Positions 16,442-64,000 of a DNA stretch of 64,000 bases are shown here, piece after piece. The notes beneath the pieces were generated by a model. It was given only the letters and a program-made list of their open reading frames with translations, searched no databases and was not told the origin of the DNA. Position 1 is the stretch's first letter. Each line of letters starts with the position of its first letter. Where the stretch lies: positions 1-64,000 of IMG/VR virus record IMGVR_UViG_3300023174_000040. One strand, 5' to 3'. The position numbers and the translations under genes were made by a program.

Positions 16442-17809
16442 ATGCAACTAACAGAAGAATTAAAAAAAGAAATAGAAAGATTACATCGTGAAACACCTGA
16501 TAATATTCACGGAGTATCTTTGGGATATAAATATAAAAATGGCCTAAAAACAAATGTGATAGGTATTGTTTTTAATGTTGATGCTAAGATACCAGAAACC
16601 GACCTGCCTAGTGATCAGATACTGCCAAAGACAATAAAAGCCGGAGATCAATATTATCTCACTGATGTGATGGAGGCCAAAAGAGCAGAATTTGTTTCTT
16701 GTTATTGTAATTCCGCTAATGCAAATACAAATCCTTGTCCAACTGTTCAAGATATAACAAGGCTGGCTCCTTGGCCAAACGGTGGGTCTGCATTATTGCC
16801 TATGAGGGGTGGGCAAGAAATAGTTCAATACCCAACATCGTGGTCTAATGTGGGCAACTCATATTATGCTAGTTTGGGAACGCTTGGTTTTTTTTGTGTA
16901 GATAACATTGACAACAAGATAGTTGGTGTCACAAATAGTCACGTTGTTTGTCATAGAAGATATTTTGCCACAAACAGAAATTGGGCTACTGAGAACTCAG
17001 ATGCGTATAATACATTCGAACCAAGAAACTGGATTTTGGACAATAAGAACCATAACCCGGGCGCTATAACCTTAATTAACTCTGGTTCATCTGTGAGAAT
17101 TGTTTGTCCTTTTATTAAGAGATATCAACCTGTGGCACCATCGCCCACATACAATTATTCAGATGTTGCTTTAATGGTTATGGATCCTGGTGCGATATCT
17201 TCTTCTGCTTCTTATAAAGTATGGCAGCCGATAGGAACAACAGACTACGCAGGATTTCTAGATTTTGCTACAACTTTAGAAATAGATAACTTATTGAACA
17301 CTAATCCAAGATTATACAGCACTGGAAGAACCACTGGTCCGAAGGGATACGCTGACACAGCAACATGTAGACTTCGTGTAAGATCAGTTGGTGGTTGGTC
17401 TAATGTCTCGAACGTAGGAGAAGAGGCCGATATTACTGTGTGGGGAGACTTGATAGAATATGGCTATGAAGATGGTAGCAATGGAACGTCCTTAGGGGGA
17501 GATTCTGGTTCGGCATTACTCGCAGATATATCCGGGGTCAGGAAAATAATAGGTTTAGTTTTTGCTGGAAATGGTACCATAGGACTGGCCTCTAGGATAG
17601 ATAGAGTTGCCTCTGAGATGAATATACGTGCATGGGATGGAACCTATAATACAGCACTACCTACATCAACAACCGGAGCCTTCACTGGCAGTGCAGTCAC
17701 AACAGATCCGGGTAATATTAAATCTAGCCAGACAATCTTAGTGTATGGCGGAAAAACTTACTACCAAGTTGGATTCACGAAAACTACTGGTTTAACTAAT
17801 ATAAATTAA
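16442..17809 (+). CDS. trypsin-like (S1/Nal1-like) serine protease with N-terminal pro-region
   Basis: Triad motifs TNSHVV, SDVAL, GDSGS; GTLG and TGRTTG motifs. Confidence 0.85.
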   Translation: MQLTEELKKEIERLHRETPDNIHGVSLGYKYKNGLKTNVIGIVFNVDAKIPETDLPSDQILPKTIKAGDQYYLTDVMEAKRAEFVSCYCNSANANTNPCPTVQDITRLAPWPNGGSALLPMRGGQEIVQYPTSWSNVGNSYYASLGTLGFFCVDNIDNKIVGVTNSHVVCHRRYFATNRNWATENSDAYNTFEPRNWILDNKNHNPGAITLINSGSSVRIVCPFIKRYQPVAPSPTYNYSDVALMVMDPGAISSSASYKVWQPIGTTDYAGFLDFATTLEIDNLLNTNPRLYSTGRTTGPKGYADTATCRLRVRSVGGWSNVSNVGEEADITVWGDLIEYGYEDGSNGTSLGGDSGSALLADISGVRKIIGLVFAGNGTIGLASRIDRVASEMNIRAWDGTYNTALPTSTTGAFTGSAVTTDPGNIKSSQTILVYGGKTYYQVGFTKTTGLTNIN

Positions 17810-17810
17810 T

Positions 17811-17975
17811 ATGCAAAAAACAATTCAAGACATCAAAAACTTAATTGCCGACCATAGAAGTTATATTTGTTCTGAATTTTGCGATAATCCAAGTTTTGTG
17901 TATGAAGAGATTTCGAAACTCAATAAATTATTGGAAGAAAAAATTAAACTTGAAGAAAAGAATAACCAAGAATAA
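17811..17975 (+). CDS. small hypothetical protein (54 aa, below the ORF-track cutoff)
   Basis: MQKTIQDIKNLIADHRSYICSEFCD...; starts 1 nt after the protease stop and precedes a terminator. Confidence 0.6.
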   Translation: MQKTIQDIKNLIADHRSYICSEFCDNPSFVYEEISKLNKLLEEKIKLEEKNNQE

Positions 17976-18016
17976 TTTATTGGATGACATATCCTTTTAA
18001 TTTTATTTTTATTTAA

Positions 18017-18085: not shown

Positions 18086-18418
18086 ATGATAGCCTATTTG
18101 ATCAGTAGCAGAGAAGAAAAATTATCTGAAATATATTTGTCAGGTGATATTAGACAAATTTTAAATCTTCTTAATTGTGAAATTCATACTGAGATAGATT
18201 TGAAGAATGGAGATTGCCTACTTATTGACAAGCATTGTTTGTTACTTGTCAATAACTATTCTAAATTTTTTGAAATCGATGGGTTTCTCCCCAACCCAGA
18301 AAATGGTTTGATTATAGGTAAGGGTTTTACTGATCCTAAAAATAGCTTAGAATATTACAAGAATACAATAAAATATCACAATATGTTTTATCTTAAAGAA
18401 GTCTTCAATCACCAGTAA
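18086..18418 (+). CDS. DUF3846-like phage protein
   Basis: A(Y)LI...EI...GD...I..L..C......L.NGD.L.ID...LL pattern. Confidence 0.5.
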   Translation: MIAYLISSREEKLSEIYLSGDIRQILNLLNCEIHTEIDLKNGDCLLIDKHCLLLVNNYSKFFEIDGFLPNPENGLIIGKGFTDPKNSLEYYKNTIKYHNMFYLKEVFNHQ

Positions 18419-19269
18419 GCACCGTTCTCAACCATTTTATATTTTTTTGGGGTTTCGTTTTCTAATACACGAACCCAATGTTTATTGTAAAATACTTGTC
18501 CAATAATTTTACTATCCCATCTAGATCCCGCTATTCCGAAAAGTATCTGCAATGCTCCGCCAAGATGAATTGCCTTTTTTCCGCTAGTTTTGGCGAAAGA
18601 CACAAGGGGTAGTGAGCTGGCACCGGTACCGATTAATGCCACATCATAGTTTATGGCGTTCATTTGCTCTTTCATGTCTGCTATCATCTCGGACCAATCT
18701 TTATATTTGCTTGGTTCTCCGACACCTGGAGAGTGCTGATGACCCAATGTGATTAAATCAAATTTAGGCAAAATTCTTTTATCTTCCCATAGAACTTCTC
18801 TTTTATTATATTGGTTTCTGATTGTTTCCGGAAAACTAGTTACGACCAAAACTTTTTTATCTTTTAGATTTTGGGTCCAAGGAATTCCTGAATAATATGG
18901 TTCCAAGCTTCTTAATGGCACTAATGTAGAATTTGGTGAATATTTTTCTATAAATCTTTTTTCATATTCGATGTCATATGGGGACCAAAGCGAAAGACAA
19001 TCCATATCTTTAATGCAATAAATTAATTCATTTATAAAACTGATTTTTGCTTCTGTTGTTTGTGGAAAAATACCATTTTGATAATATGTCTTATATTCAA
19101 CTTCTTCTGTCCAGACCGGCTCCTGCCCCTTTTCATGATATTCAAAATAGTTTTTTACACATCTTAACTCATTGCATCCTATTTTGCCAGCAGCAAATGG
19201 TTCTTCATTATTGAATTTTGAAGAAAGGTGTGTGCTTGCATCTACGAAATCGTTTATATATTTTTGCAT
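18409..19269 (-). CDS. glycan-locus-associated protein (putative glycosyltransferase)
   Basis: DVALIGTGASSLPL..FAK..GKKAIHLGGALQILFGI.G.RW, a pattern recalled from polysaccharide loci. Confidence 0.55.
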   Translation of the reverse strand: MQKYINDFVDASTHLSSKFNNEEPFAAGKIGCNELRCVKNYFEYHEKGQEPVWTEEVEYKTYYQNGIFPQTTEAKISFINELIYCIKDMDCLSLWSPYDIEYEKRFIEKYSPNSTLVPLRSLEPYYSGIPWTQNLKDKKVLVVTSFPETIRNQYNKREVLWEDKRILPKFDLITLGHQHSPGVGEPSKYKDWSEMIADMKEQMNAINYDVALIGTGASSLPLVSFAKTSGKKAIHLGGALQILFGIAGSRWDSKIIGQVFYNKHWVRVLENETPKKYKMVENGAYW

Positions 19270-19925
19270 TTGTTTATTAAATACCTATTTAAATTGAATT
19301 TTATGAATTTTTCTTTTCTGTCAATGCCTGTTGCTTCTTGAAACCAATCTTGCGCTGTTAAATAATTGTTCTTATTAATATTCCAGTAAGGACTATGCAT
19401 TTTATGAAATAAAAATGGAAAATCTATTAAGTACACATCTAGATTTTGTTTGGTGGATATGTATAAAAGATACCAATCCCATGCACATTGGCCCATTAAG
19501 AACTTATCATTATCAAAAACAATCTTTTTATTTAAGATAAAGAAATCTAAACCATGCCAGTTTAGAACTGGGTTTTTTCCTTCGTCGTAATCATATTTGT
19601 GTCCGACAACTATAGAGTTTTCATCCAACTTGCTTGTTATCTTATTCCAATTTTCTTGATTTTGCTGAATCTTTATATCGCTATTTATTATGCAAAAATA
19701 TTCTGACTGGCTTTGTCCTATTCTTATTATATCTCTAATTCTTTGGAATTTTTTGCCATCAAAATTAGCGGCCTTATTATATATCTTTTCACAGTTAACC
19801 TCTATGTTTTCTGATGGGTCCTGTACCGCATATATTTTATTTGCAAAAAGTAGCCAGCTCTTATATTGTTGCCCAACATCTCTTGGGTTAAACGAGGTGT
19901 AAAAATCTAATTTCATCAAAAACAC
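19254..19925 (-). CDS. putative glycosyltransferase (GT-A-like)
   Basis: CIINSDI DxD-like motif, LDFFI, WDWYL; sits within the glycan operon. Confidence 0.5.
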   Translation of the reverse strand: MFLMKLDFYTSFNPRDVGQQYKSWLLFANKIYAVQDPSENIEVNCEKIYNKAANFDGKKFQRIRDIIRIGQSQSEYFCIINSDIKIQQNQENWNKITSKLDENSIVVGHKYDYDEGKNPVLNWHGLDFFILNKKIVFDNDKFLMGQCAWDWYLLYISTKQNLDVYLIDFPFLFHKMHSPYWNINKNNYLTAQDWFQEATGIDRKEKFIKFNLNRYLINKCKNI

Positions 19926-20848
19926 CTCATTTTTGAAAATTTATAATAAGCTGATAAACAATTATTTTTCATGAATTCTATTTTTTCATTATTATAAGAT
20001 TTTAGTATTTCCAATGTATTGATAGCCTCTTCTCTCTTTATGAATATTGCAATATCTTCCCAATTAAATTCTTTTATAATCGGAGGCTGCCACTCATCTG
20101 AAAAAATAACTGGTATAGAACCTATAGACATACTCTCCCATAATCTTAGAGTATTTGGCCCAGTACCCTCTGGACACAAAGAGAATATTGTATCCGATAA
20201 TATCTCATTGTATTTTTTTGTGTTTTTTTTATATTCCTCTAAATAAGATTCTTCTAGCTCTTCTTTTTTGATTTGTTTTCCATATACTATTTTGTGATAA
20301 AACCATCTTTCTTTTAATTCGTAAAGAGTTCCATCGACTCCTTCTAAATATTCTTTTAATTTCAATCTAATATCTGACCTGTATTGTTTTGAATTTGATC
20401 CTATAAAAGATGTTATATATTTTTTATCTTTATTATTTTTTATTATTAATCCTTCCCGCCGGTCTAGGTTCTCATAATTAACTGCTATCAATGGCCAGGA
20501 ATGAAAATTAAATTTGTCTGATCGATTGTTCTTTTCGCAGTGTGATAGATGAACATCTGACACCCCTATTTCTTTCCAAAGATTCTCAATATATCTCCAG
20601 CTAATATGCTGACAAACCGTATGAATTTTTTTACCTTTGAATTTTTCTATTTTTTCAAATATGAGTTCTCTATATTTTTTTAAGTTTATTCCTTCTTTTG
20701 AATGAGTTAAATTATCGATAAGAGTTGCCCATGGAAAAGCTAGGTATATATTTTCTTCATCTTTGATATAGATGTGATTGTTAAATGCTTGTTTTTCCGT
20801 TAATGCTGGATATTGCCAATCTAAATTTGTTTCTATAAAAATATGCAT
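19916..20848 (-). CDS. exostosin-family (GT47) glycosyltransferase
   Basis: FSLCPEGTGPNTLRLWESMSIGSIPVIFSD. Confidence 0.85.
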   Translation of the reverse strand: MHIFIETNLDWQYPALTEKQAFNNHIYIKDEENIYLAFPWATLIDNLTHSKEGINLKKYRELIFEKIEKFKGKKIHTVCQHISWRYIENLWKEIGVSDVHLSHCEKNNRSDKFNFHSWPLIAVNYENLDRREGLIIKNNKDKKYITSFIGSNSKQYRSDIRLKLKEYLEGVDGTLYELKERWFYHKIVYGKQIKKEELEESYLEEYKKNTKKYNEILSDTIFSLCPEGTGPNTLRLWESMSIGSIPVIFSDEWQPPIIKEFNWEDIAIFIKREEAINTLEILKSYNNEKIEFMKNNCLSAYYKFSKMRCF

Positions 20849-21297: not shown

Positions 21298-23103
21298 ATG
21301 GAAAACAACAAACAAATTATCGCTATGCTTGATGGAAAAGAAATCCGCATCTCCAAAGAAAGAAAATGCGGAGCCTCCTGTATGGCTAAAAATGATCCCC
21401 GCCTTATTGCAAATTTAAACCAAATTGAGGCATTAAGATCTAGGGGTCCGATAAGCTCAGATAGTGTTGTTACCATACCAATAGTTTTTAATGTAATATC
21501 TAATCCTAATTTACCTTGGACAAATATCACCGATGCAAAACTAAATGAACAGGTAAATCAGTTAAATTTAGATTATTCCGGAAACAACCCAGACGTTGTT
21601 AATTTACCTTGTGTTTTTGCTCCTTATTTACCAAGTGGAACAGGAATAAGATTTGAAATAAATCAAATAAGAAGAAAGGTCTCAAATACACTTATATTTT
21701 CGAAAGGCAACTTTTTTGGCAATTGGGCTCTTCAAGAAAGTATGAAGTATGAACCGGCCGGACTTAATCCGATATTAATACTTCCTAATAATATAAAGCC
21801 TCTTAATATATGGGTTTGTCTTTTTAATAATGATGGACTAATAAGCAGCGATCCGGATTTACTAGGATATAGTTATTTCCCCGATTTTCAGGATGGTTCA
21901 GCGGATTTTTTAAGAAATGATGGCGTGGTTGTCCAGCCATACTGCGTTGGAAGCAATAATAGTCCAACCTTTTTACCAAATGGCACTTCCAGCACGTTTG
22001 GTAGGGGTCGCACATTAACCCATGAAATTGGGCACTGGTTGGGTCTACGTCATACTTGGTTCGACGATGAGGTTAGGGACGCCCAAGGCAACCATCTCAG
22101 TTGGCTTTGTAATTCGAGTCCTGATGATATTCCGCCAAAAAAAGGTCCATCATATGGGTGTCCTTCCTTCCCTAATCTTTCTGGCCACCCCGTGGAGGGC
22201 TCTTGTTTTCCAAGCTCTCCAAACGGTGATCTCACCGTTGGTCTTGGTATAAGTAAATTTCCGCTTGTTGAAGGTTCTGGTACTTTATTCATGAATTACA
22301 TGGATTATGTAGATGATTCTTGTATGATTATGTTTACCAAATCCCAAAGAGACATAATGAGGGGTTTCCTTTCGACAAGGTTTAGGAAATCATCCATAAT
22401 CAGTGTGACTTCTCCATTCCCGAGCTCTATATCTGTGCCTTGTACACCTACTATTACACTGACCAAAACAATAAGGCCTACCAAGACGCCCACGCCCACT
22501 TGCACATCCACTCTAACATTAACTCCTACTCGCACATCCACTCCAACATTAACTAACACACTAACATTAACTAAAACTATCAGGCTCACAAAAACTCCTA
22601 CTCCAACTTTAACATCAACTCCAACATCAACACCTACTCCCACACCAACATTAACTAAAACTATCAGGCTCACAAAAACGCCTACTCCAACATCCACGCC
22701 TACTCCAACATCCACGCCTACTCCAACTCAAACATTAACAAGAACAATTAGAACTACAAGAACACTTACTCCGACTCCAACGTTGACACCAACCTCAACA
22801 AAAGGAAGTTTGCCTGGTACTCCAACTAATTTAATTGTGACATCAAACGGTGCCGGATCTGTTAGTATAGCTTGGGCTGTACCATTATCAGACGGCGGCA
22901 GAACAATAAATAGTTATATTATCAGATATACCCGTGACCAAGTTAATTATAGTTATAAAACAGTGGCATCTACAGGTATGATGAATGCAACAACAGTTTC
23001 AAGCTTAGTTGTGGGTTCAACATATACATTCAGGGTCGCAGCAATTAACTCTGAAGGACAAGGGGGATGGTCGACTGGTTTTCAATTTCTTGTTACCTCT
23101 TGA
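21298..23103 (+). CDS. M43 (pappalysin/ulilysin-like) zinc metalloprotease + Thr/Pro linker + FN3 domain
   Basis: [16 protein letters not shown]; MNYMDY Met-turn; PGTPTNL..W..PLSDGG..I..Y...[14 protein letters not shown]. Confidence 0.9.
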
Positions 23104-23189: not shown

Positions 23190-25091
23190 ATGGAAAACGA
23201 AAAAATCGTCCATATATCCGAGAACATCAGGAGATGTGGAGTAGACGAAATAATTAGGAGAGACCCCGCTCTCAGAAGAACCCTCAAAGCAGCTAATATT
23301 CACGCATTAGAAGTCACTCTCAGCTCAGATAGTGTTGTTACCATACCAATAGTTTTTAATGTAATATCTAATCCTAATTTACCTTGGACAAATGTTACTG
23401 ATGCAAAACTAAATGAACAAGTAAATCAGTTAAATTTAGATTATTCCGGAAACAACCCAGACGTTGTTGATTTACCTTGTGTTTTTGCTCCTTATTTACC
23501 AAGTGGAACAGGAATAAGATTTGAAATAAATCAAATAAGAAGAGCAAATTCAACCAAACTTTTCTCGGCTGGCGGAACTGGCGCTGATTGGATCCTTAAT
23601 GAAAGCATGAAATTTTCTAATCAAGGAGGAATAAATCCAATATTAACGCTTGCTAATGGTATAAAGCCTCTTAATATATGGGTTTGTTCTTATAATTCTG
23701 ATGGTAATCCATCAACTGGATATGACCTTTTAGGATATTCTTATTATCCTCATTACTCCATTTACGGCTCAAATTATGCGAGAAATGATGGTGTCGTGGC
23801 TATATCCTACAGTGTGGGCAGCCGCAATAGCCCAACAACTGACCCAAAAGGAAGAACATTTTTTGGTTTAGGTCGAACATTGACCCATGAAATTGGGCAC
23901 TGGTTGGGTCTTGCTCACACATGGAACGACAACGAGGTTACAGACGAGGCAGGTAAGCATATTCGATGGGTTTGTGACGCAAGTCCATTTGATTTGCCGC
24001 CTCAAAAAGGCTATTCATTTGAATGCCCTTCTTTCCCTAATTTCAATAACATAGAAGGTGGCTGTTTTCCGAGCAGCCCAGGTGGTGATCCCACCGATGG
24101 TCTTTACACGGGCCTCTTTCCACTTGTCGAGGGCTGTGGTAGTTTATACATGAATTATATGGATTATGTTGATGACTCTTGTATGATTATGTTTACCAAA
24201 TCCCAAAGGGATATAATGAGGGGTGTCCTCTCATCAGTGTATAGAAATAACTCAATAATCAGGACGACCTCTCCATTCCCGAGTGCCATATCTGTTAATC
24301 CTTGCACACCAACACTCACTAGAACAAATACTTCCACTCCCACCAAAACTTTAACTCCTACACCCACCAAAACGCCAACACTAACCCAAACCAAAACGCC
24401 TACCCAGACTCCAACAAAAACCCAGACTTTAACTATAACTCCCACATTAACTGGAACTCCAACATTAACCCCTACATTAACAAAAACCCCAACCTTAACC
24501 AGAACGATGCGAGTTTGGCCTGTACCTGGGACGACACGTGTAACGCAAACTCCAACATTAACCACCAATTCTCAAACCCCCACCCTGACCAGAACCCCAA
24601 CTTTAACCAATACTCCGACCCTAACTAGTTCTCAAACACCAACAAGGACTAGCACACCCACTCCCACTCCAACTAATACGCCCACCTCAACTTCTACTCC
24701 CACTCAAACATTAACCAAAACAATTAAGCTTACTAAAACCCCAACTTTAACACTTACGCCGACTCCAACATTAACACCAACCTCAACAAGAGGAGGCTTA
24801 CCTGGTACTCCAACGAATTTAATTGTGAGATCAAACGGTGCTGGGTCCGTTAGTATAACCTGGTCGGCACCACTATCAGATGGAGGCAGAATGATAAATA
24901 GTTATATTGTCAGATACACCCGTGACCAGGTCAATTATAATTTTAAAACAGTGGCATCTGGAGGTCTGATGAATGCAACAAATGTTTCAAGCTTAGTGTT
25001 AGGTTCAACTTATACATTCAGAGTTGCAGCAATTAACTCTGAAGGACAAGGGGCATACTCGACTGGTGCTCAATTTGTTGTGCCCTCTTGA
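23190..25091 (+). CDS. M43 zinc metalloprotease + Thr/Pro linker + FN3 (tandem paralogue)
   Basis: [22 protein letters not shown]; same architecture as the preceding gene. Confidence 0.9.
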   Translation: MENEKIVHISENIRRCGVDEIIRRDPALRRTLKAANIHALEVTLSSDSVVTIPIVFNVISNPNLPWTNVTDAKLNEQVNQLNLDYSGNNPDVVDLPCVFAPYLPSGTGIRFEINQIRRANSTKLFSAGGTGADWILNESMKFSNQGGINPILTLANGIKPLNIWVCSYNSDGNPSTGYDLLGYSYYPHYSIYGSNYARNDGVVAISYSVGSRNSPTTDPKGRTFFGLGRTLTHEIGHWLGLAHTWNDNEVTDEAGKHIRWVCDASPFDLPPQKGYSFECPSFPNFNNIEGGCFPSSPGGDPTDGLYTGLFPLVEGCGSLYMNYMDYVDDSCMIMFTKSQRDIMRGVLSSVYRNNSIIRTTSPFPSAISVNPCTPTLTRTNTSTPTKTLTPTPTKTPTLTQTKTPTQTPTKTQTLTITPTLTGTPTLTPTLTKTPTLTRTMRVWPVPGTTRVTQTPTLTTNSQTPTLTRTPTLTNTPTLTSSQTPTRTSTPTPTPTNTPTSTSTPTQTLTKTIKLTKTPTLTLTPTPTLTPTSTRGGLPGTPTNLIVRSNGAGSVSITWSAPLSDGGRMINSYIVRYTRDQVNYNFKTVASGGLMNATNVSSLVLGSTYTFRVAAINSEGQGAYSTGAQFVVPS

Positions 25092-44434: not shown

Positions 44435-45283
44435 GTGTTTTTTTGTATTCATTCTAATGTGCAAGATTCTTCACCTTATATGATAAATCTAAAAGATGTT
44501 CTTTCTATACCAAGTGTCTCAAAGAGAGAAGATAGGGTCATAGAATTCATATTAGATTTTTGCCGTAAGAACGATTTGTATCATTATCTTGATGAAAAAA
44601 GAAATATTTATGTGCAAAAAGGATCATTAAATGAAGATGAGTATTTTCCTTGCGTGATTAGTCATATGGATACTGTCCACAGTGATCAAGACTATCTTGT
44701 AGACAAAAATATTAATCTTAATATTTTTGAATTATATAATGAATTTTCCGACTATAAGCCGATATTGGTTGCTTATGATCCAATAACCAAATTAAAAACA
44801 GGCATAGGCGGAGATAATAAATGTGGTGTGTACGTTTGCCTAAGATTGCTAGAGGAATTAGATAATATAAAGATTGCCTTCTTTGTAGAAGAAGAAATTG
44901 GTATGCTTGGATCATCTTCTTTGGATCCCAAATTCTTTGAGAATGTAGGTTATGCCCTTCAACCTGATGCCCCAACGAATAACTGGTTCAGCAAGACTTG
45001 CAGTGGACATAAACTCTGGACAGAAGAGTTTTTTTCCACTGTTGAAAGCATATTAGACAAGTATAATATCAATAATATCTCAAGGGATCCTTTCACCGAT
45101 GTTGTTCAATTGAGGAAAAATTTTGATTTCTGTTGTGCTGTTCTACCTGTGGGCTACTACAATCAGCATTGTGCAGATGAATACGTTGTAGAATCAGACA
45201 CGAAACTTTGTGTAGAATTAGCCAAAGATATTATAAGCGACTTGGGAAATAGAAAGTTTTATATGGAGAGATCTTCTAACTGA
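44435..45283 (+). CDS. M28/M20-type zinc peptidase (start may be ATG 44480)
   Basis: SHMDTVH; GIGGDNKCG; FVEEEIGMLGS; GYYNQH. Confidence 0.8.
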   Translation: MFFCIHSNVQDSSPYMINLKDVLSIPSVSKREDRVIEFILDFCRKNDLYHYLDEKRNIYVQKGSLNEDEYFPCVISHMDTVHSDQDYLVDKNINLNIFELYNEFSDYKPILVAYDPITKLKTGIGGDNKCGVYVCLRLLEELDNIKIAFFVEEEIGMLGSSSLDPKFFENVGYALQPDAPTNNWFSKTCSGHKLWTEEFFSTVESILDKYNINNISRDPFTDVVQLRKNFDFCCAVLPVGYYNQHCADEYVVESDTKLCVELAKDIISDLGNRKFYMERSSN

Positions 45284-46082: not shown

Positions 46083-46097
46083 CAATTTCTTGAAAAA

Positions 46098-47004: not shown

Positions 47005-47006
47005 TA

Positions 47007-47138: not shown

Positions 47139-47210
47139 GAACGATGCGATCTGCGGCTTGTCGGGCTCCCGATTTTGTAACCACAATCAGTTGGTGAAAG
47201 GAATACTATT

Positions 47211-47774: not shown

Positions 47775-47855
47775 GACAAGAATAGAAAAATAAACCTTAA
47801 TATCTGGGTACGTTGGTGGGATAGACTGGATAGAAAACACTGATTCTTGATCTTG

Positions 47856-47872
47856 TTTCTTTCCGGTACGGT
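47856..47872 (+). promoter_or_regulatory. 17-bp motif, copy 7
   Basis: TTTCTTTCCGGTACGGT. Confidence 0.75.
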
Positions 47873-47913
47873 TTGGTGTTGGTCCGTTAAAACACCTTCT
47901 TGCAAAGATATTT

Positions 47914-50135: not shown

Positions 50136-50138
50136 ACA

Positions 50139-50146
50139 TTATATAT
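50139..50146 (-). promoter_or_regulatory. putative late promoter ATATATAA, 3 nt before the kinase ATG
   Basis: CAT-ATATAATGT-ATG on the - strand. Confidence 0.55.
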
Positions 50147-52581: not shown

Positions 52582-52617
52582 AAGAGGATTGAATTTTTAA
52601 TTTTTTACCCCTCTCGG

Positions 52618-52634
52618 TTTCCTTTTGGTACGGT
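52618..52634 (+). promoter_or_regulatory. 17-bp motif, copy 8
   Basis: TTTCCTTTTGGTACGGT in a divergent intergenic gap. Confidence 0.75.
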
Positions 52635-52669
52635 TGATAACGGGAAGGTCCACAGAGAATTTGTCTTAA

Positions 52670-53263: not shown

Positions 53264-53293
53264 AAAAAATAAAATAGTTTAATAAATAACCTC

Positions 53294-53458
53294 ATGAAGG
53301 TTATTTGTGAAAACAATGATTATTATCCTGCCGCTCTTAAGACCGGCAACGTCTATGATGTCTATATTGCAAAAGATTCTACTTTTATCATAATTGATGA
53401 ATTTCTTGAAAATCAAGAATATCCAAGAAATATATTCAAGATAATGGAACATTCTTGA
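53294..53458 (+). CDS. 54-aa hypothetical protein (not in the ORF track)
   Basis: MKVICENNDYYPAALKTGNVYDV...IIDE...YP; fits the + strand operon. Confidence 0.65.
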   Translation: MKVICENNDYYPAALKTGNVYDVYIAKDSTFIIIDEFLENQEYPRNIFKIMEHS

Positions 53459-56688: not shown

Positions 56689-57849
56689 ATGCAAGACGAT
56701 GCAGTTCCAACTACAACTCCATTATTTACCGTAGGAAGCGAAGTTTATTCTTTGCTTCAAGAGAAAAATGGTTATTTAGAAAAAGTTGTAATTAAAAAAA
56801 TAATATACAATCCAGAAAATCAATCTTATCTTTATAAAGATACTTGGAATGGTATTTATTTTGAGGAAGATTTGCGTGAGATACAATCCCCAACCCCAAC
56901 ATTAACACCCACTTTAACGCTAACAAAAACCCCAACATCCACTCCAACAAAAACCAATACTCCGACTAGCACTAGGACCCCAACATCCACTCCAACAAAA
57001 ACAAAAACCAATACTCCGACTAGCACTAGGACCCCAACATCCACTCCAACAAAAACCAATACTCCGACTATTACTAGGACCCCTCTTCCCACACAAACAT
57101 CAACTCTTGCCCCAACCCCAACCTGTACTTCAACGCCCACATTGACTCTTACTCTAACGCCCACACTGACATCAACATCCACTCTAACACCAACACCTAC
57201 ACTCACTTCGAATACAATAATTCCAAGCTGTAACTCAATTACTTTGGTGGGCATCAATGCGGACACAACAGGAAATTCTGCGACGAAAACATCTGCTGGT
57301 GGTTGGGATTCATCATCGTATTCCGTTGAAACTTATTCAGAACCAGTCTCAGTAACATTCCAGGCTTCAACTAACGGAAATTATTTTATGGGTGGATTTT
57401 CTTATAATCCAACTACAAATACTCAGACTTATATAAATACAACCTATGGATTTTATATACAAAATGGATTTTTAGAGATATACGAATATGGAGGCCAAGT
57501 TAATGTCCCCGGCTCTACCATCACATTATCCACCGATGTTTGGAAGGTAGATTATAATGGAACAAATGTTGAATATTATAAAAATAATAATTTAATTTAT
57601 ACCTCATTAAATCCAATAACACAACCACTGCACGTTTTCTTTGCACTTTTGACTGGGGGGCAAGGCGTCACTAATATTTGTGTCAGATCAACAAACACTC
57701 CAAAACCGACGCCAACAAATACACCTACCAATACACTTGTTATGCTTTCTTATGAAAGAAGCTCAGATGCCCCAATCAGCACAGATCAAAATTGGGGTTT
57801 ATTAAGATCAGTCATACCAAACAACATACAAGGGTGGGGCGAATCATGA
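56689..57849 (+). CDS. Thr/Pro-linker protein with a ConA/SPRY-like C-terminal domain
   Basis: About 115-aa T-x repeat; beta-rich domain [13 protein letters not shown]...KVDYNG.NVEYYKN. Confidence 0.75.
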
Positions 57850-60800
57850 AAAAATATACCATAGTTTTAAAAAACATTTCCGAAAAAGAACAATTTCAAT
57901 CTGAGCTGAGAGGGGTTTCATCACTAGAGTATATCCCCAATAGAGAGTGTAATATCGAAAATATTGAATATTCAAGATGTTTACTTTCGGAATTAACTGA
58001 TGAGGAGGCTGTTCTATTAAAGAACGATAATAGAGTTAGTGCTATAAAAATGACAGCACCAACTATTTTAAAACCAGCTGTATTTACTTCCGAAAGTCTA
58101 TTGCCATCAAAAATATTATTTAAATCACAATCAAATACAGATAATATTAAAATACAATCACTATCTCAGCAAGCAAATATAGAAAATATTCCTGATGGTA
58201 ATGGTGTTGACGTTGTTATTGTGGATGGAATAATTACAGGAAAATCAAGAAATGAAAGTTTGATTTTTGATGACGAGGACATACACCCAGAATTATTGGA
58301 TATAAACGGTAATTCTAGAGTAGAATTGATAAATTGGAATGCATATGTTAATAAACCAAGGTCATATCCATATAAAGCTATTTTAGAATTTCCTCCTGAA
58401 AAAGATAATAATCTTCATGGACTACACGTTGCCGGAACAGCATGTGGTGCAACATTAGGGTGGGCAAAAAATAGTAAAATATATAATATTTCTCCTTATG
58501 CAGGCCCACTTGGTTATCAATACCTATCAGCCGTAACAAATTGGCATTTATCAAAAGGAAATTCTAGGCCAACAATTACCAATCATAGCTATGGTGTTAG
58601 TTATCCTCTTTATGAGGCTAGATATATTACTAAAATTATAGCTGGCGGGGTGGAATACATTGCCCCAAGAGAAACAGAACAAGCTGTAGCGGAGGCTGTG
58701 ATCAACCAAAATGGTCAAATTGAATCATTTAATATTATTAATTCGGGTGCTGGTTATACTAATAATCCGGACATATCATATAATGGTGGTGGTGGAGATG
58801 AAGCCGCAATAATAATGGCTAGTGGAACAGTAAAAGAGATAACAGTTACTAATATAGGATCTGGATACAATCAAAATAGCCCACCAAATATTATATTTTC
58901 TCAGCCCTTGGCAGGAGTAGCAGCATCTGGAACGTGTACGGTTAACTCTAATGGGAATATCGATAGTATTAAAATAACAGAATGGGGTAGTGGATACGAT
59001 CAGCCACCAACTATAACTTTTGATGACCCTGCTTCTGGGACAACAGCAACAGCAACAGCAATAATTGGCTCTAATTTTATTAAATCCATACAAATACTAA
59101 ATAGTGCTCCTGGCTTTGGGAGAAATGGCACTAAAATATATGCTGATCCTCCGTTTATTATATTCAGCGGAGGAAATTGTATTAAAGATGCATTGTGGAC
59201 AATTTCAAATGATAATGGAGAATATAATACTTATTGTGGGCTAGGCGAACCAAACGACTATTCGAGGATTGTTACTGGTCTATATGTTATAGCTACAAAA
59301 AAGACTAATATTGATTCAATTAGTTTTAAATATACTTTACTAGGAGGGGAATATGGTTCGGTACCGAATGTGTCGTTTAGATACCAAGGCCCTTCCTTGG
59401 AGGGAACGTCGGGTCCAATAGCCAGGACAACAGTAGATGAAGGTCAAGTTTCTAGCATAATACCATCATGGTCGGAGGATGTCTCGGTGAACGACTCATC
59501 TTACGGATGGTTTACTTCTCCACCACAAATTTATATAACAAATGGTGGTGGATTTAGTGAAGAAGTTTTAGATAATTGGGGAATCCTTCTTTATAAGGTA
59601 TCAATTCCAGGCAATCCAGCAGCGGGGTTATTTTTTCCTACTTATATTTACCCGGCTCCTGCCAGAGACATAGTTATGGATTCATTACTAGAGGATATGA
59701 TAGAGGCGGGTGTTGTAGTTGTTGCAGCTGCGGGGAATAGTTTCTATGATATACGAATTCCTACCTCTGGTAATTATGATTTAACCATAGAGGCAAATTT
59801 ATGCAATCTACAAAAATCAAATCCATCAATTCCATATGACGACAGCATAACAGAAGATATTATAACCCCAGGAGGCAATTATACTGCTCTGTATCGTGGA
59901 CAGTTGTGGGGGGATAATATCTATGATTTTTTTCCATTTCAAGGAAGCAGTCCAGGATCAGCTAGTGGAGTCATTACTGTTGGTTCTATGTCTTATGAAT
60001 GCTGTCCTGAGATTAAATCTTTATTTAGCAATTCAGGAAAAAGAATAGACATATATGCTCCTGGCGGTCAAATCTTATCATCAGCTTTTTTTAATGCTGA
60101 GTCATTTGGTGGCAGTTTTTTTTGCGATCATCCAAAGGATAATAGATTTGGTATGTCAAAATTAAGCGGAACAAGTATGGCTAGTCCTCAAGTTTGTGGA
60201 GCAATAGCCAGCTATTTAACAGAAGGCAACATACAGAGATCAGAGAATATAGTAGAGCAAGCCACGCAATGGATCAAAGATAATGGTATACCAACATTAT
60301 CTAACGGAGCTTTTCCATATAATCTTCATGACGGGACAAATAAAATTTTGTATTTTCCCAACATTATAGTAAATGTTTCAACAACTGCGATTGCTCCAAC
60401 GTTAACACCTACTTCTACACCAACCCCCACACCAACCAATCAAGATGTTCCTACGACTTTGCCTCCATATCCAACTAATACTCCAACTTTAACAAATACT
60501 CCAACTTTAACAAATACACCAACTCTAACAAATACACCAACTCTAACATCACCAGAGCCAATGCTAGTTACCGATGGATTGGTATTGCACTATGACTTCA
60601 GCAATCCACTCAGTTATTCCGGAAATGGCTCCAATATAGTTGATTTATCAAATTCCAACAATAATGGAACCCTTATAAATAATTATGCTGCGGCTATATC
60701 TTGGGTTAATGATGGTGACAAAAGTTATTTTAATTGGTCAACAAATGATGGTGGAAGTGGGAGTAACTCATTTGGAGGTTGTATACAAACAACCTCAACT

Positions 60801-62696
60801 AATACCTATAAAGATTTTACCATTGTATTTCAACCGGATTTTAGCACCTCTGGAATAGTAGGTCTATTTTGTATTCCAAATGATAAAAGTTTAAGATTTT
60901 ATAATGGAAATACTTGGGTGATACCAAATCCCGGTAACGGTGATGATTGGGCAGGATCACCAACAACATATTATGTAAACGGGCAAGTGAGCAATACAAT
61001 GCTATCTGGATGGAATATTTTTGGCGGAGCAAAGAACAATAACAATCCAGCTTTCCCCGACAATGCCAGGCTATATATTGGCACAAGCGGTTATCAAGAC
61101 CGTCATATGCAAGGTAAGATTGCTGTGGTATTGATGTATAATAGAGTTTTAACACATCAAGAGCAAATACAAAACTATAATTTCTTAAAAACAAGATTCG
61201 ATCAGATCTCAAATCCGACTCCCACACCAACCAATACACCAACACCTACACCAACGCAGACGCCCGAAAATGGAAATCCATATAAATTTGATCAACCTAA
61301 AATTTTTGATATTATCCCAATAAACACCACGAGTTTAGATAAAAATGTGGCTTCAACAGGAAGAGAACCAGTAAAAATAGAAGATAATTATAAAATATAC
61401 ATATTTGAAAAATTAAATAATTATAAAGCTGATTCAGGAGGGGGACATACTTCCGTTCAATCTACAATATTCTTTTTATCTGTAAAAGGACATAATATAA
61501 GAGGTCCATTAACTATTGATTTCTGTTCTGGAGATGGAGATGAAGACAATAATTTATTTGAGATAAGCGGTCCTTATTATAATGACTTTTCATACACCGG
61601 ATCTACTGTTGCAATACTTGTCAAAGAGGATTTGATTTACGAAAATAAATCCGAATATAATATAAGAATTAGAGCTGGTTCTTGTGGTTGGGACGAATGT
61701 TATTCTTTTGAAAAATTATTTAAAATAATTTTAGTAAAAGTCAATCCAGAAAACATTGAACTTAAAACTGATATGGTTATATTTTTAGATAATCCTTGGA
61801 GGGATAATAGACTTCCTTTGTCCTCAAATCTGTATACAGTCTTTAATTATGAAAATTCAATTAAAAAAATTGATGCTTATTCTAATATAGAGTTTGCCTC
61901 CGGTGTTGGCGATGATGATAATTATAGATTCTTGCTTAGTAAAGGAACATTCACAGACTATGTTAGTGGCTTGTCCAATATTTGGTGTAATTGTTATACC
62001 AGTTGTTATACTCTCATATGTTATAACACAGAAGGTTTATCAGATGGAGATGTAATAAGCATAAGAATTAAATTATATAATCAGGACAGAACTTATGGTA
62101 ATTCTTACGCAAGCAGTTGTGATTCTTTTTTACAATATTCTACTTTATTAAGCCCAACACAGCCAAGAGCAGAGTATGTAGAAAAGATACTAAATATTCC
62201 TGTTTATCAATCAACAAGCATACCCAGAACAGACAGTGTGACAGACTTTAGTTTAGTTGCTAATACTTTAGATGCGTCATATCCAGAATATTTATATTTG
62301 TGGATTATTCATCCAAAAGAATATATGTTTTTAGATGAAAATATATATATTAGAATAGAATATACAAAAAACAATGGTTTAAATTGGAATTTTTTAATTG
62401 ACGCCTATTCTTCTGGGGGATGGCACAGCTTCATCAACTATGGTTGGGTATTTTTTGATTTAAAATCACAAATATTTTATACTCAATATGAACGTGCATC
62501 ATCACAGGAAAATCATAATTCTCCAATAAGTTATTGTGATACTGTTCAGTTTAGATGCGCCACAGTAGACAAAAGTGGAGAGGTCGAATCTTTATCTAAT
62601 TGGACTTATTCAAATGTTTTTTCTACTTTAAGCCGTTTTGGAGAAGACTGTTCCAATCAAGTTGAATCTAAAAGCCTATACATCTCTTTTGACTAA
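57846..62696 (+). CDS. S8 subtilisin-like protease with internal insert, Thr/Pro linkers, LamG and cadherin-like domains (start revised to 57846)
   Basis: [28 protein letters not shown]; [12 protein letters not shown] LamG-type start; ATGA overlap. Confidence 0.9.
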
Positions 62697-62705
62697 GGAT
62701 TTTTT

Positions 62706-64000
62706 ATGAATTTTGATCATTATGTTAAAAATTTATTTTTATTAAAAAAAGACGAAAATATAAAAAGTATTTCTGTTGGAGTAAAAACCATCTCTGGACA
62801 ACCGTCCGAAGAAGAAGCAATAGTTTATTTTGTTGAAAAAAAAATTGATGAAAAAAAAATAGATCCTGATAAAATAATTCCAAAAACTTTAAAAATTAAT
62901 GGCAAACAATATAAAACAGATGTTGTAGAAGGTAATTTTGAACTTATTGATTGTTATGCCTATAGCGATACTCAAAAACAATCTAATTATCTATGGTGTA
63001 CTGATTGTGAAAATCCTCCAGAATCTATACGTGCTCATAGAAAAAAAACAAGACCTTTAATAGGTGGAATTAGTATTGGAAATTCAACAATAGCAGGCGT
63101 AGGTTCAAATCTAACGGCTGGTGGTTATGGTTCTGCTGGTACATTAGGTTTAATTGCTATAGATAAAAGAGATGGCTGTGCAGTTGGAATAACTTGTGCC
63201 CACGTAGTTTGTTCTGATTATTTAATATCTAACGAAAAAAATAATGTAAATAATACAGCTGAACAAATTATTAATCAGCCAGCTTATTTTGACTGTCCTG
63301 GTGATATTTGCTCTGATACAGCTATTGGAAAAATAAAAAGACATTCCATAGCAAGTGCAAATCCAGATTATGAAAACTATATTGATTGTGCTTTAGTTTC
63401 AATAAATAATGGTTTATTAGATGAATCTTCTTTCGGTCAATTAGGATTTTCTTCACAAGAGTTAGATTGGGCCACAGAAGCAGAATGTAATAGTTTAATT
63501 ACCTCAAATATAAAATTATATAAAAGTGGTAGAACTACAGGCGCTATAGGAGGTGATGATTGTCCTATAGTTCCTTTTGCATTAAATGCATCATTAACGA
63601 CAGTAGCCCCTGCACAATATAAATATCCTAGTATTCTTTATCAGGGAGGTATAATTTTTAGGTATGCAGCAAATTCACCAGTGCCCGACCGCTGGGGCCA
63701 ACCGATGCCGAAAGAAGGGGTTGCAGTTGGGGGAGACTCTGGATCTGCTTTGATTGGGGATTTTAATGGAGTAAAAAAAATAGTCGGCATAATTTATGCG
63801 GCAGGCTCACAATATGATTATCAAGCAAATTTGAAAGTGGGTGTTTATGGCATAGCGTATCCAATATATAAACTGGCAGAAATTATGAATGTGGAACCAC
63901 TATCACAAACTCCTGGTAGAAATACTATAAATTATAGTAATTCAGAAAATTGGACATATAAAACTTTTGATTCTGATGAACCTTTTATTATTTTTGAAGG
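62706..64000 (+). CDS. second trypsin-like (S1/Nal1-like) serine protease; 3' end runs off the window (absent from the ORF track)
   Basis: MNFDHYVKN...; AGTLG, TCAHVV, IDCALV, SGRTTG, GGDSGSAL. Confidence 0.88.
   Translation, partial: MNFDHYVKNLFLLKKDENIKSISVGVKTISGQPSEEEAIVYFVEKKIDEKKIDPDKIIPKTLKINGKQYKTDVVEGNFELIDCYAYSDTQKQSNYLWCTDCENPPESIRAHRKKTRPLIGGISIGNSTIAGVGSNLTAGGYGSAGTLGLIAIDKRDGCAVGITCAHVVCSDYLISNEKNNVNNTAEQIINQPAYFDCPGDICSDTAIGKIKRHSIASANPDYENYIDCALVSINNGLLDESSFGQLGFSSQELDWATEAECNSLITSNIKLYKSGRTTGAIGGDDCPIVPFALNASLTTVAPAQYKYPSILYQGGIIFRYAANSPVPDRWGQPMPKEGVAVGGDSGSALIGDFNGVKKIVGIIYAAGSQYDYQANLKVGVYGIAYPIYKLAEIMNVEPLSQTPGRNTINYSNSENWTYKTFDSDEPFIIFE

What the first reader, a model, noticed from the sequence alone, without database searches (positions are those of the whole stretch)
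16442..64000. Tethered protease arsenal in a phage
Six peptidases of four families have recognisable catalytic motifs: S1 x2 (16442, 62706), M43 x2 (21298, 23190), S8 (57846) and M28 (44435). The M43 and S8 enzymes are joined by Thr/Pro stalks to FN3, LamG or cadherin-like domains, like cellulosome-style tethered enzymes. They could digest a proteinaceous surface layer or biofilm matrix of the host, rather than mature the capsid.
Basis: partly seen in the sequence, partly recalled or inferred. Interest (0 to 1): 0.65.

Follow-up and report, generated by a model that had tools for sequence, protein, structure and literature searches.

The report
Phage protease set with split subtilases
A giant T4-like lake phage carries a real set of intact secreted-type proteases. 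Its subtilisin-like enzymes appear to be split genes, with the first ~30 residues of the protease domain encoded at the end of the neighbouring protein, which probably docks the protease onto that carrier.

Summary
The window is the first 64 kb of a 323-kb fragment of a freshwater T4-like jumbo phage. It has a gp23 capsid protein, a terminase and its own gp21-type prohead protease elsewhere.

All six ORFs exist and keep their catalytic residues, but three family labels need correcting.
- **"S1" x2:** these are NAL1-like PA-clan serine proteases, a large family found mostly in phages.
- **"M28":** this is an untethered M20/M42-like enzyme in the replication block, not part of the set.
- **M43 pair:** tandem pro-ulilysin-like zymogens with a conserved Arg-Cys-Gly pro-segment motif (likely cysteine switch), a Thr/Pro stalk and FN3.
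- **Domains:** FN3 is confirmed, LamG is weak and cadherin-like is unproven.

The main new result concerns the S8 genes. Most phage S8 enzymes of this family carry an "NWGLLR…NWG" segment, which is the N-terminus of the mature domain. This phage's three S8 genes lack it. The protein encoded immediately upstream ends in exactly that segment. The same pairing holds in 9 of 9 readable loci, and the tail sits at the C-terminus in 21 of 23 database hits.

Most likely the tail docks the subtilase onto carrier proteins (a lectin-like stalk protein, or a second protease), building multi-enzyme complexes that act outside the cell. Virion attachment and the substrate are untested.

The parts
16442..17809 (+). 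NAL1-like PA-clan serine protease, 455 aa. His167, Asp241, Ser355 (GDSGS). No stalk and no signal peptide. Follows the RCC1-repeat gene 12241-16428 after a 13-nt gap.
   Evidence: PHROG 20754 'protease', E 1.8e-10; 595 homologues; triad invariant; NAL1 PDB, E 5.5e-5.
21298..23103 (+). M43 (ulilysin-type) metallopeptidase zymogen 1, 601 aa. Pro-segment with an Arg-Lys-Cys-Gly motif (nt 21361-21372). [11 protein letters not shown] at nt 22021-22053. Met-turn at nt 22288-22308. Thr/Pro stalk at aa 380-511 (nt 22435-22830). FN3 at aa 508-593 (nt 22819-23076).
   Evidence: (pro-ulilysin E 1.4e-29).
23190..25091 (+). M43 zymogen 2, 633 aa, a tandem paralogue (64% identical in the catalytic part, 82% in FN3). 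Arg-Arg-Cys-Gly at nt 23229-23240. HExxHxxGxxH at nt 23886-23918. Stalk at aa 370-543 (nt 24297-24818). FN3 at aa 540-628 (nt 24807-25073).
44435..45283 (+). M20/M42-like (clan MH) metallopeptidase, catalytic domain only. The likely start is the Met at 44480. Untethered, in the replication/metabolism block, and not part of the tethered set.
   Evidence: PHROG 4191, E 2e-31; PepD alignment covers the H-x-D, bridging Asp, Glu-Glu and Asp positions.
56689..57849 (+). Carrier protein, 386 aa. Small N-terminal domain, then a Thr/Pro stalk (aa 64-177, nt 56878-57219), then a beta-rich domain resembling phage virion structural proteins, then a 34-aa C-terminal S8-complementing tail (nt 57745-57846). 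Its stop codon overlaps the S8 start (ATGA).
   Evidence: PHROG 19691, E 2.2e-9; junction identical in an independent run.
57846..62696 (+). Trans-type S8 subtilase, 1616 aa. I9-like prodomain. Catalytic Asp at nt 58224-58226, His at 58416-58418, Asn at 58581-58583, Ser at 60174-60176. A ~300-aa insertion (nt 58647-59537) is shared with cyanophage virion proteins. Thr/Pro stalk at nt 60372-60563. Possible LamG at nt 60564-61190. Second stalk at nt 61191-61286. Unassigned C-terminal region at nt 61287-62693. It lacks the NWGLLR…NWG N-terminal segment of its family.
62706..64000 (+). First 431 aa of a 1009-aa protein that continues to genome position 65735. It has a NAL1-like protease (His166, Asp227, Ser345), an FGE-sulfatase-like domain and a C-terminal S8-complementing tail. 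It is followed, 1 nt after its stop, by the second trans-type S8 (65737-70389, with CBM_4_9 repeats).
6455..16428 (+). Context: two Cys-rich RCC1-repeat giants with Thr/Pro stalks (6455-10915 and 12241-16428) and the 368-aa protein at 11054-12160. The 6455 and 11054 proteins share modules with each other and the 11054 protein with the 4670-6427 protein. Same kind of secreted-type modular proteins, no protease domain.

Best explanation
A freshwater T4-like jumbo phage carries an accessory set of extracellular-type peptidases. They are made without signal peptides and are probably kept latent in the infected cell by prodomains.

The components are:
- Two tandem pro-ulilysin-like M43 enzymes. Each has an N-terminal Arg-Cys-Gly motif matching pro-ulilysin's pro-segment (likely a cysteine switch), a Thr/Pro stalk and a C-terminal FN3 domain.
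- Two NAL1-like serine proteases.
- Subtilases (S8) of the family already annotated in T4-like cyanophages.

Here the S8 genes are split. The roughly 30 residues that form the N-terminus of the mature S8 domain (…NY-N-R-S…NWGLLR…WG) are missing from the S8 polypeptide. They are instead encoded as the extreme C-terminus of the protein translated just upstream.

Inferred mechanism:
- The tail folds onto the S8 core. This completes the S8 domain and docks it on its carrier.
- In this phage the carriers are a stalked lectin-like protein (56689) and a NAL1-like protease/FGE-domain protein (62706). In relatives, an M43 giant also serves as carrier.
- The result would be modular multi-enzyme complexes.
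- These would be released at lysis, on the virion or free. They would then cut proteinaceous material on or around host cells.

The M20/M42-like enzyme is a separate cytoplasmic-type peptidase.

Shown: the sequence features, the gene pairing and the structural position of the segment. Inferred: the physical docking, the extracellular site of action and the substrate.
For: Phage identity and a separate prohead protease.

Intact active sites.

Zymogen features:
- The Cys-Gly of the pro-segment motif is invariant in five phage M43 proteins.
- The same motif aligns to pro-ulilysin in a phage homologue.
- Cysteine-switch latency of this family is described in PMC6949598.
- An I9-like beta-alpha-beta-beta-alpha-beta unit appears in the model of a cis relative.

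No signal peptides: maximum 12-residue hydropathy is 1.26 or less.

Split S8, comparative evidence:
- All 3 S8 genes here are preceded by a tail-bearing gene with an overlap or a 1-nt gap.
- The same holds in L011, L024, L104, L105, L106 and L107. That makes 9 of 9 readable cases.
- About 50 of 53 other phage S8 genes carry the segment in cis.
- A tail HMM hits 23 of 27 cis enzymes at residues ~80-122 and 0 of 9 trans enzymes.
- A tail-profile search of 1.84 billion representatives gave 23 hits. In 21 of them NWG[LI]LR lies 8-15 residues from the C-terminus.

Split S8, structural evidence:
- In the AlphaFold model of a cis enzyme (pLDDT 82.9) the segment is ordered (blocks 83-87). The disordered break (residues 83-91) lies before it.
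- Structural alignment puts model residue 101 on residue 4 of mature proteinase K, Z about 34. NWGLLR therefore occupies the position of the canonical N-terminal segment.

Other support:
- Trans-type S8s form one side of a branch, support 99/95.
- The junction is identical in an independent metagenome.
- The S8 insertion and the carrier's domain match cyanophage virion or baseplate protein families.
- In cultured cyanophages the S8 gene lies inside the baseplate gene cluster.
Against: - No direct evidence of binding exists. The only complex prediction gave no answer.
- The tail could instead be a recognition or cleavage site.
- No proteomic evidence places any of these proteins in a virion. 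In cyanophage S-CREM1, the 14 proteins found in the virion were described as 4 structural, 9 of unknown function and 1 without matches. That wording leaves no place for its annotated S8 (shallow proteome).
- In another jumbo phage the NAL1-like gene sits among nucleotide-metabolism genes. NAL1 itself is an intracellular plant protease.
- The shared TATATA upstream motif also precedes a helicase and a methyltransferase gene. It therefore says nothing about late expression.
- The host and the substrate are unknown.
Confidence: 0.5

Rival explanations
1. The S8 enzymes are dedicated assembly or maturation proteases rather than tethered weapons. Each recognises the C-terminal tail of its upstream partner as a substrate that mimics its own processing junction. 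It trims or activates that partner (a fibre, baseplate appendage or partner zymogen) and is then released or degraded.
For: - The genes are translationally coupled pairs.
- In cyanophages the S8 gene lies within the baseplate cluster. S8 is apparently not among the 14 proteins found in S-CREM1 virions.
- HMMER's sequence alignment placed the second WG, not the first, on the canonical mature N-terminus. That reading would put NWGLLR on the prodomain side of a cleavage site.
Against: - The structural alignment puts NWGLLR itself on proteinase K residues ~7-12.
- The segment is confidently ordered, and the flexible break lies upstream of it.
- This rival does not explain why trans-type S8s have lost their own segment.
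- The large binding-type extensions of the S8s (CBM_4_9, LamG-like, stalks) are unnecessary for a housekeeping maturase.
Confidence: 0.2
2. The enzymes act inside the infected cell. They would serve host takeover, counter-defence or nutrient recycling by degrading host proteins, and the extra domains would target intracellular substrates.
For: - None has a signal peptide.
- NAL1-like genes in other jumbo phages sit among early-type or nucleotide-metabolism genes.
- NAL1 is an intracellular protease (PDB titles).
- The M20/M42-like gene lies in the replication block.
Against: - M43 and S8 keep secreted-type latency devices and conserved cysteines that align with ulilysin's.
- The partners are FN3, CBM_4_9, LamG-like, RCC1 and Cys-rich modules with Thr/Pro stalks (up to 51 Cys per protein). 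These are typical of extracellular proteins.
- The closest cellular M43 relatives are from Bacteroidota, a family described as secreted zymogens (PMC6949598).
Confidence: 0.12
3. The genes are recently acquired passengers (morons) with no role in infection, or are inactive.
For: They are absent from the closest complete relative, LR756511.
Against: - Catalytic residues are intact in all of them.
- The M43 pair and the NAL1-like gene are syntenic and 85-90% identical in a related contig from another sample.
- The stretch recurs in lake and freshwater metagenomes from at least ten studies.
- The split-S8 module is conserved across many contigs.
Confidence: 0.05

Closest known systems
Subtilisin-like serine protease of T4-like cyanophages (PHROG 9158; e.g. 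Synechococcus phages S-H38 and S-CREM1 ORF165)
   Same: Same S8 family. PHROG 9158 scores E 1.5e-75 for the S8 at 65737 and 5e-35 for the S8 at 57846. The I9-like prodomain, the Asp/His/Asn/Ser motifs and a position next to structural-type genes are shared.
   Different: The cyanophage enzymes are single polypeptides of ~550 aa that contain the NWGLLR…NWG segment. Here that segment has moved to the C-terminus of the upstream protein. The S8s also carry long extensions (stalks, LamG-like, CBM_4_9, and an insertion of a virion-protein repeat).
Proteinase K / aqualysin subfamily of S8 (PDB 2prk, 4dzt)
   Same: Same fold. The model of a cis relative aligns at Z 32-34, rmsd 2.3-2.7 A, over about 270 residues. 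The N-terminal WGLxR element is the same (model 101 = proteinase K residue 4).
   Different: These are one-chain secreted enzymes. No case is known to me, or was found in the paper library, in which that element is supplied by another protein.
Ulilysin and mirolysin (M43B, unicellular pappalysins)
   Same: The catalytic domain aligns end to end, E 1e-29 and 5e-26. [quoted passage not shown]
   Different: The phage proteins have no signal peptide, carry a 130-175-aa Thr/Pro stalk plus FN3, and are phage-encoded tandem paralogues. Identity to the closest cellular (Bacteroidota) genes is only 28-34%.
Rice NARROW LEAF 1 (NAL1) protease and bacterial Nal1-like proteins
   Same: The N-terminal domain plus a trypsin-fold core with His-Asp-Ser and GDSG are shared. 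The family profile hits the NAL1 structures 8hau and 8pme at E 5.5e-5. Atlas neighbours carry Nal1_C and NAL1_N.
   Different: The phage family has a conserved ~60-aa C-terminal extension and forms largely viral clusters. One copy here is fused to an FGE-sulfatase-like domain and the S8-docking tail.
Cellulosome cohesin-dockerin tethering
   Same: The idea is shared: enzymes with different specificities are joined through flexible Thr/Pro linkers and a small portable docking element on different carriers.
   Different: No cohesin or dockerin domain was found in any Pfam scan. The proposed docking is by completing the fold of the enzyme itself. The enzymes are peptidases, not glycosidases.

Membership tests
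MEROPS S8 (subtilases) | Catalytic Asp, His and Ser in that order, with the oxyanion Asn, in a subtilisin fold | tested here: met
   Pfam Peptidase_S8 scores E 1.3e-16, 7.5e-25 and 7.5e-20 for the three genes. The motifs are located. A cis relative's model aligns to proteinase K at Z about 32-34.
MEROPS S8 (subtilases) | The whole mature domain, including the N-terminal WGLxR segment, lies on one polypeptide | tested here: not met
   The segment is absent from all 9 trans-type S8s and present at the C-terminus of the upstream protein.
MEROPS S8 (subtilases) | N-terminal I9-type prodomain | tested here: inconclusive
   Pfam Inhibitor_I9 gives only E 0.065 in the third S8. The model of a cis relative shows a beta-alpha-beta-beta-alpha-beta unit at residues 5-73. 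It was not compared with I9 structures on its own.
MEROPS M43 (pappalysin/ulilysin) | HExxHxxGxxH zinc motif, Met-turn, ulilysin-like catalytic domain | tested here: met
   Pfam Peptidase_M43 is above its cut-off. phmmer to ulilysin and mirolysin gives E 1e-29 and 5e-26 over the whole domain.
MEROPS M43 (pappalysin/ulilysin) | Short N-terminal pro-segment with a cysteine switch | tested here: inconclusive
   The Cys-Gly is invariant in 5 phage proteins. The same motif aligns with pro-ulilysin 8cd8 in a phage homologue. Zinc ligation was not tested.
MEROPS S1 (chymotrypsin family) | Match to the Trypsin / Trypsin_2 models | tested here: not met
   No Pfam Trypsin family hit at E <= 0.01. There is no NCBIfam hit for 16442 and no protease family hit for 62706. 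PDB hits are only to 3C-like proteases at E 0.1.
NAL1-like PA-clan serine proteases | NAL1-type N-terminal domain followed by a His-Asp-Ser trypsin fold with GDSG | tested here: met
   NAL1_N gives E 5e-4 to 3e-3 in both copies at the same profile positions. The family profile hits NAL1 structures at E 5.5e-5. The triad is invariant. Atlas structural neighbours carry Nal1_C and NAL1_N.
MEROPS M28 | Match to Peptidase_M28, with the co-catalytic zinc ligands His, Asp, Glu, Asp/Glu, His | tested here: not met
   There is no M28 hit. The best hits are M42 at E 0.001 (below the cut-off) and M20 PepD at E 1.4e-13. Four ligand positions align to PepD 2qyv. It belongs to clan MH, but the family is not M28.
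T4 gp21 prohead protease (S77) | Match to Peptidase_S77, next to the scaffold and major capsid genes | tested here: not met
   None of the six matches. The genome has its own S77 gene at 289419-289841, E 2.4e-28, beside gp23 at 291115-292308.
Cellulosome-type cohesin-dockerin system | Cohesin and dockerin domains | tested here: not met
   No such Pfam family appears in any scanned protein.
Virion-associated enzymes (depolymerase-like) | Presence of the protein in purified virions | not testable with these tools
   The evidence is indirect only: PHROG matches to virion or baseplate families and the position of cis homologues in cyanophage baseplate clusters.

The most novel reading that the evidence does not exclude
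The ~34-residue C-terminal tail (NY-N-R-S … NWGLLR … WG-COOH) is a portable docking tag. By supplying the missing N-terminal segment of a split subtilase, it both completes (activates) the enzyme and fixes it to any carrier that bears the tail. This lets phages assemble interchangeable multi-protease complexes (S8 + NAL1-like, S8 + M43, S8 + lectin stalk), a proteolytic counterpart of the cellulosome built on fold complementation.
Probability: 0.4. Interest if true: 0.82.

Novelty: new variant of a known kind. Interest (0 to 1): 0.7.

Why it matters
- **Proteases in phages.** Phage-borne enzymes known to open the way to the cell are almost all glycosidases or lyases. A large, conserved set of secreted-type proteases in an abundant lake phage points to protein layers (S-layers, sheaths, pili, matrix proteins) as a barrier that phages also attack.
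- **A possible new way to couple proteins.** If the split subtilase is confirmed, it would be a natural example of tethering and possibly switching on a protease by fragment complementation. That is of interest for protease regulation and for the evolution of gene fission. It could also serve as a small genetically encoded docking tag.
- **Annotation.** The result gives a simple rule. A phage S8 gene without the NWGLLR segment should be read together with the gene upstream.

Tried and rejected
- **Complex prediction.** S8 65704 (residues 12-570) was run with the tail of the 62706 protein (residues 950-1009). It gave no answer (ipSAE 0.00, folded without alignments). This is neither support nor evidence against.
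- **AlphaFold of the S8 C-terminal region.** Residues 925-1634, single sequence, gave pLDDT 31 and is unusable. The LamG and cadherin-like calls therefore stay open. The Atlas feature search gave only cadherin leads at 0.79-0.81, a range that shuffled proteins often reach.
- **T4 late promoter TATAAATA.** There were 65 sites against 78 expected, and only 3 lie before genes. I could not use it to time expression.
- **The TATATA motif.** It precedes both M43 genes, the RCC1 genes and 56689. It also precedes helicase and methyltransferase genes, so it is not a marker of structural genes.
- **Searches that found nothing.** tblastn of the NAL1-like protein against the phage collection, and a single-protein scan of IMG/VR, were both empty. 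The family only appeared in the big protein search.
- **NCLDV origin.** No NCLDV capsid was found (the control was silent, so this alone is weak). The gp23, terminase and S77 hits settle it as a T4-like phage.
- **Cyanophage host.** No psbA was found in the 323-kb fragment, so the host is unresolved. The closest cellular M43 genes are almost all from Bacteroidota. That speaks to gene origin, not host.
- **Frameshift or assembly error.** I rejected this as the cause of the tail/S8 arrangement for three reasons. The order is tail then prodomain then core, unlike the cis order. It recurs in nine contigs from different samples. The junction is identical in an independent run.
- **Literature.** Searches for phage S8 function, NAL1-like phage proteases and natural split subtilases found nothing relevant.

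Full report
**What the window is**

The window is bases 1-64000 of a 323,267-bp IMG/VR virus record. The record is linear and CheckV rates it 64% complete. It uses the standard genetic code and about 91% of it is coding.

It is a T4-like phage:
- A gp23-type major capsid protein scores E 2.9e-90 at 291115-292308.
- A large terminase is present.
- A gp21-type prohead protease (Peptidase_S77, E 2.4e-28) lies at 289419-289841.
- No NCLDV capsid was found.

The closest deposited genome is the 595-kb uncultured phage LR756511, whose capsid protein is 78.6% identical. Sequence nearly identical to 16-25.5 kb of the window occurs in lake and freshwater metagenomes from more than ten studies. The host is unknown. 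There is no psbA in the fragment.

**The six reported peptidases**

All six ORFs exist and keep their catalytic residues.

*The M43 pair* (21298-23103 and 23190-25091):
- They align over the whole catalytic domain with ulilysin (E 1.4e-29) and mirolysin. This includes [11 protein letters not shown], the Met-turn and the conserved cysteines.
- They are tandem paralogues, 64% identical in the catalytic part and 82% in FN3.
- Both begin with a short segment carrying Arg-(Lys/Arg)-Cys-Gly. The Cys-Gly is invariant in five phage homologues.
- In a closer phage homologue the same motif aligns with the pro-segment of pro-ulilysin 8cd8.
- The family is described as secreted zymogens held latent by a cysteine switch (PMC6949598).
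- After the catalytic domain comes a 130-175-residue stalk of about 60% Thr+Pro, then a clear FN3 domain, E about 1e-13.

*The two 'S1' enzymes* (16442-17809 and 62706-65735):
- They match no trypsin model.
- They match NAL1_N weakly at the same profile positions, and PHROG 20754 'protease'.
- The 455-aa protein has at least 595 full-length homologues, all unnamed, many on contigs of 100-320 kb.
- His167, Asp241 and Ser355 are invariant in 32 of them.
- The family profile finds the rice NAL1 protease structures at E 5.5e-5.
- The Atlas places it among mostly viral clusters, next to bacterial Nal1-like ones.
- They are therefore PA-clan NAL1-like proteases.
- The second copy is 27% identical to the first. 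It continues beyond the window and adds an FGE-sulfatase-like domain, E 5e-16.

*The 'M28' enzyme* (44435-45283):
- It is a clan-MH catalytic domain closest to PepD/M20 and M42.
- It belongs to a recurrent phage family, PHROG 4191, E 2e-31.
- It lies among AAA ATPases, CobS/CobT-like genes and DNA ligase. That block carries a distinctive upstream motif, TCYYTYYGGTACGGT.
- It has no stalk or binding module. I do not count it as part of the set.

*The S8* (57846-62696):
- It has all four catalytic motifs.
- It carries a ~300-residue insertion that matches repeats of cyanophage virion and baseplate proteins.
- It has two Thr/Pro stalks.
- It has a possible LamG domain, E 0.016 and sub-threshold, and a 470-residue tail end that I could not assign.
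- Two further S8 genes exist, at 65737-70389 (with CBM_4_9 repeats) and at 309923-312469.

*Signal peptides.* None of these proteins has an N-terminal hydrophobic stretch.

**The unexpected part: split subtilases**

Each of the three S8 genes is immediately preceded by a gene whose product ends in the same ~34-residue tail. The tail is an NY-N-R-S-like motif, about ten residues, NWG(L/I)LR, about six residues, Asn, then WG and zero to two more residues. The junction is an ATGA overlap or a 1-nt gap, and the two genes are in different frames. The preceding genes are:
- 56689-57849, a stalked 386-aa protein whose beta-rich domain matches a phage 'virion structural protein' family.
- 62706-65735, the NAL1-like/FGE protein.
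- 308701-309921.

Evidence from the wider S8 family:
- The family is common in viral contigs, with more than 567 matching stretches.
- In about 50 of 53 distinct genes read, a homologous segment with identical spacing (F-D-K-S … NWGLLR … NWG) lies inside the S8, between the prodomain and the catalytic Asp.
- This phage's S8s and a few relatives have a gap exactly there.
- A profile built only from five tails hits 23 of 27 cis enzymes at residues ~80-122, and none of nine trans enzymes.

Evidence that the tail is a C-terminal module paired with S8:
- Searching the tail profile against 1.84 billion representative proteins gave 23 hits. In 21 of them NWG[LI]LR lies 8-15 residues from the C-terminus, in proteins of 48 to 1125 aa. 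One hit is an internal (cis) match.
- Wherever the downstream gene could be read, it is a tail-less S8 with intact Asp, His and Ser motifs. This covers L011, L024, L104, L105, L106 and L107 plus the three pairs here, 9 of 9.
- Two more contigs have a tightly coupled downstream gene that could not be read.

Carriers differ between loci:
- an M43 giant (L011, and probably L107);
- a NAL1-like protease with a Thr/Pro stalk (L104);
- an FN3 protein (L106);
- DUF642-type proteins.

The six complete trans-type S8s form one side of a branch against 27 cis enzymes, support 99/95. This fits a single fission followed by carrier swapping. L011 and L107 were left out because my Ser-motif pattern did not match their variant, and L104 was left out because it is partial.

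The junction at 57846-57849 is identical, without indels, in a contig from an independent study.

**What the segment is**

An AlphaFold model of a cis enzyme, built with a 27-sequence alignment, has mean pLDDT 82.9. Its only disordered stretch near the N-terminus is residues 83-91, just after the prodomain. The segment that follows, residues ~92-140, is confidently modelled (block means 82-87, apart from the 91-100 block at 70).

Structural alignment to mature proteinase K, aqualysin and relatives gives Z 32-34. It starts at model residue 101, which equals residue 4 of the mature enzymes. This puts NWGLLR (residues 104-109) on positions 7-12 of proteinase K, which from memory read Pro-Trp-Gly-Leu-Ala-Arg.

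HMMER's sequence alignment had placed the second WG there instead. I give the structural alignment more weight but note the disagreement.

On either reading, the tail corresponds to the N-terminal part of the mature domain and lies downstream of the flexible prodomain junction. The simplest reading is that the carrier's tail packs onto the S8 core in place of the missing segment.

**Function**

Shown:
- intact active sites;
- likely latency devices;
- no export signals;
- domains and linkers typical of extracellular proteins;
- tight gene pairing;
- recurrence in nature.

Inferred:
- The enzymes stay latent in the cytoplasm.
- They leave the cell at lysis, either built into the virion or free.
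- They act on protein outside the cell.
- S8 is physically joined to its carrier.

For virion association:
- PHROG matches to virion and baseplate families.
- The cis homologues lie inside cyanophage baseplate clusters.

Against virion association:
- S8 is apparently absent from the shallow S-CREM1 virion proteome.
- NAL1-like genes sit among nucleotide-metabolism genes in another jumbo phage.

The set is accessory. LR756511 has no S8, M43 or NAL1-like gene. A closer relative from another sample keeps the NAL1-like gene and both M43 genes in the same order.

The nearest cellular M43 genes are almost all from Bacteroidota, at 28-34% identity.

**Verdict**

The most interesting element was not in the original finding. 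It is a family of phage subtilases whose N-terminal segment is encoded on the neighbouring gene, most likely as a docking device that builds multi-protease complexes.

The single complex prediction returned no answer, so binding remains an inference from comparative and structural evidence.

Noticed in passing
window 33600-53300 and genome to ~183 kb (e.g. upstream of 33691, 39134, 43086, 47914, 52670): A strongly conserved motif, TCYYTYYGGTACGGT, lies 6-117 nt upstream of about 37 genes. Almost all are on the + strand and most are small or replication-type genes (about 9-fold enriched). It may be an early or middle promoter or a processing signal. None of the stalked protease genes has it.
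   Followed up: partly
window, e.g. 6455, 11054, 21298, 23190, 37937, 56689; 66 genes genome-wide: TATATA lies within 70 nt upstream of 66 genes, often starting only 10-13 nt before the ATG and with no Shine-Dalgarno sequence between (ATATATA is about 6-fold enriched upstream of genes). This suggests very short or absent leaders. The canonical T4 late promoter TATAAATA is not enriched.
   Followed up: partly
window 4670-16428: Modular Cys-rich proteins (up to 51 Cys). The two giants at 6455-10915 and 12241-16428 have RCC1 beta-propeller repeats. 6455 and 11054 share a 230-aa N-terminal module (72% identical). 4670 and 11054 share a 52-aa Cys-rich C-terminal module (79% identical). The pattern looks like shuffling of adhesin or fibre-type modules.
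   Followed up: partly
window 18409-20848 (- strand): A GT47 exostosin-like glycosyltransferase (E 1e-17) and a weak GT-D-like protein lie between the NAL1-like and M43 genes, and they are conserved in the related contig L014. They might O-glycosylate the Thr/Pro stalks, which would protect the stalks from the phage's own proteases. This is pure speculation.
   Followed up: no
window 58647-59537 (S8 residues 286-582) and genome 309923-312469: Two of the three S8 genes carry a ~300-residue insertion between the oxyanion Asn and the catalytic Ser. It matches repeats of very large cyanophage virion and baseplate proteins (PHROGs 701, 708, 2885).
   Followed up: partly
genome 252718-254997 (outside the window): A 759-aa YHYH-domain protein matching baseplate-wedge families has a C-terminal ~125 residues that match the C-terminal part of the cyanophage S8 family profile (PHROG 9158 positions 569-695). 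That domain is therefore shared between S8 enzymes and a structural-type protein.
   Followed up: no
window 39134-42140, 47914-49188, 3139-4173: Auxiliary and replication genes: CobS-like/MoxR AAA ATPase plus CobT-like VWA protein, a T4-type ATP-dependent DNA ligase (PHROG 114, E 8e-85), and an IMPDH/GMP-reductase-family gene.
   Followed up: no
L015 8635-11290 (298-kb JGI contig): In another jumbo phage, two adjacent genes of 454 and 429 aa lie among RNR, thymidylate synthase and NUDIX genes. The second is a NAL1-like homologue. The first was not checked and may be a tandem copy.
   Followed up: no
window 56960-57040: Contigs from several public runs break inside the Thr/Pro-stalk coding repeat of gene 56689. 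Stalk length may therefore vary between populations, or the repeat may simply be hard to assemble.
   Followed up: no
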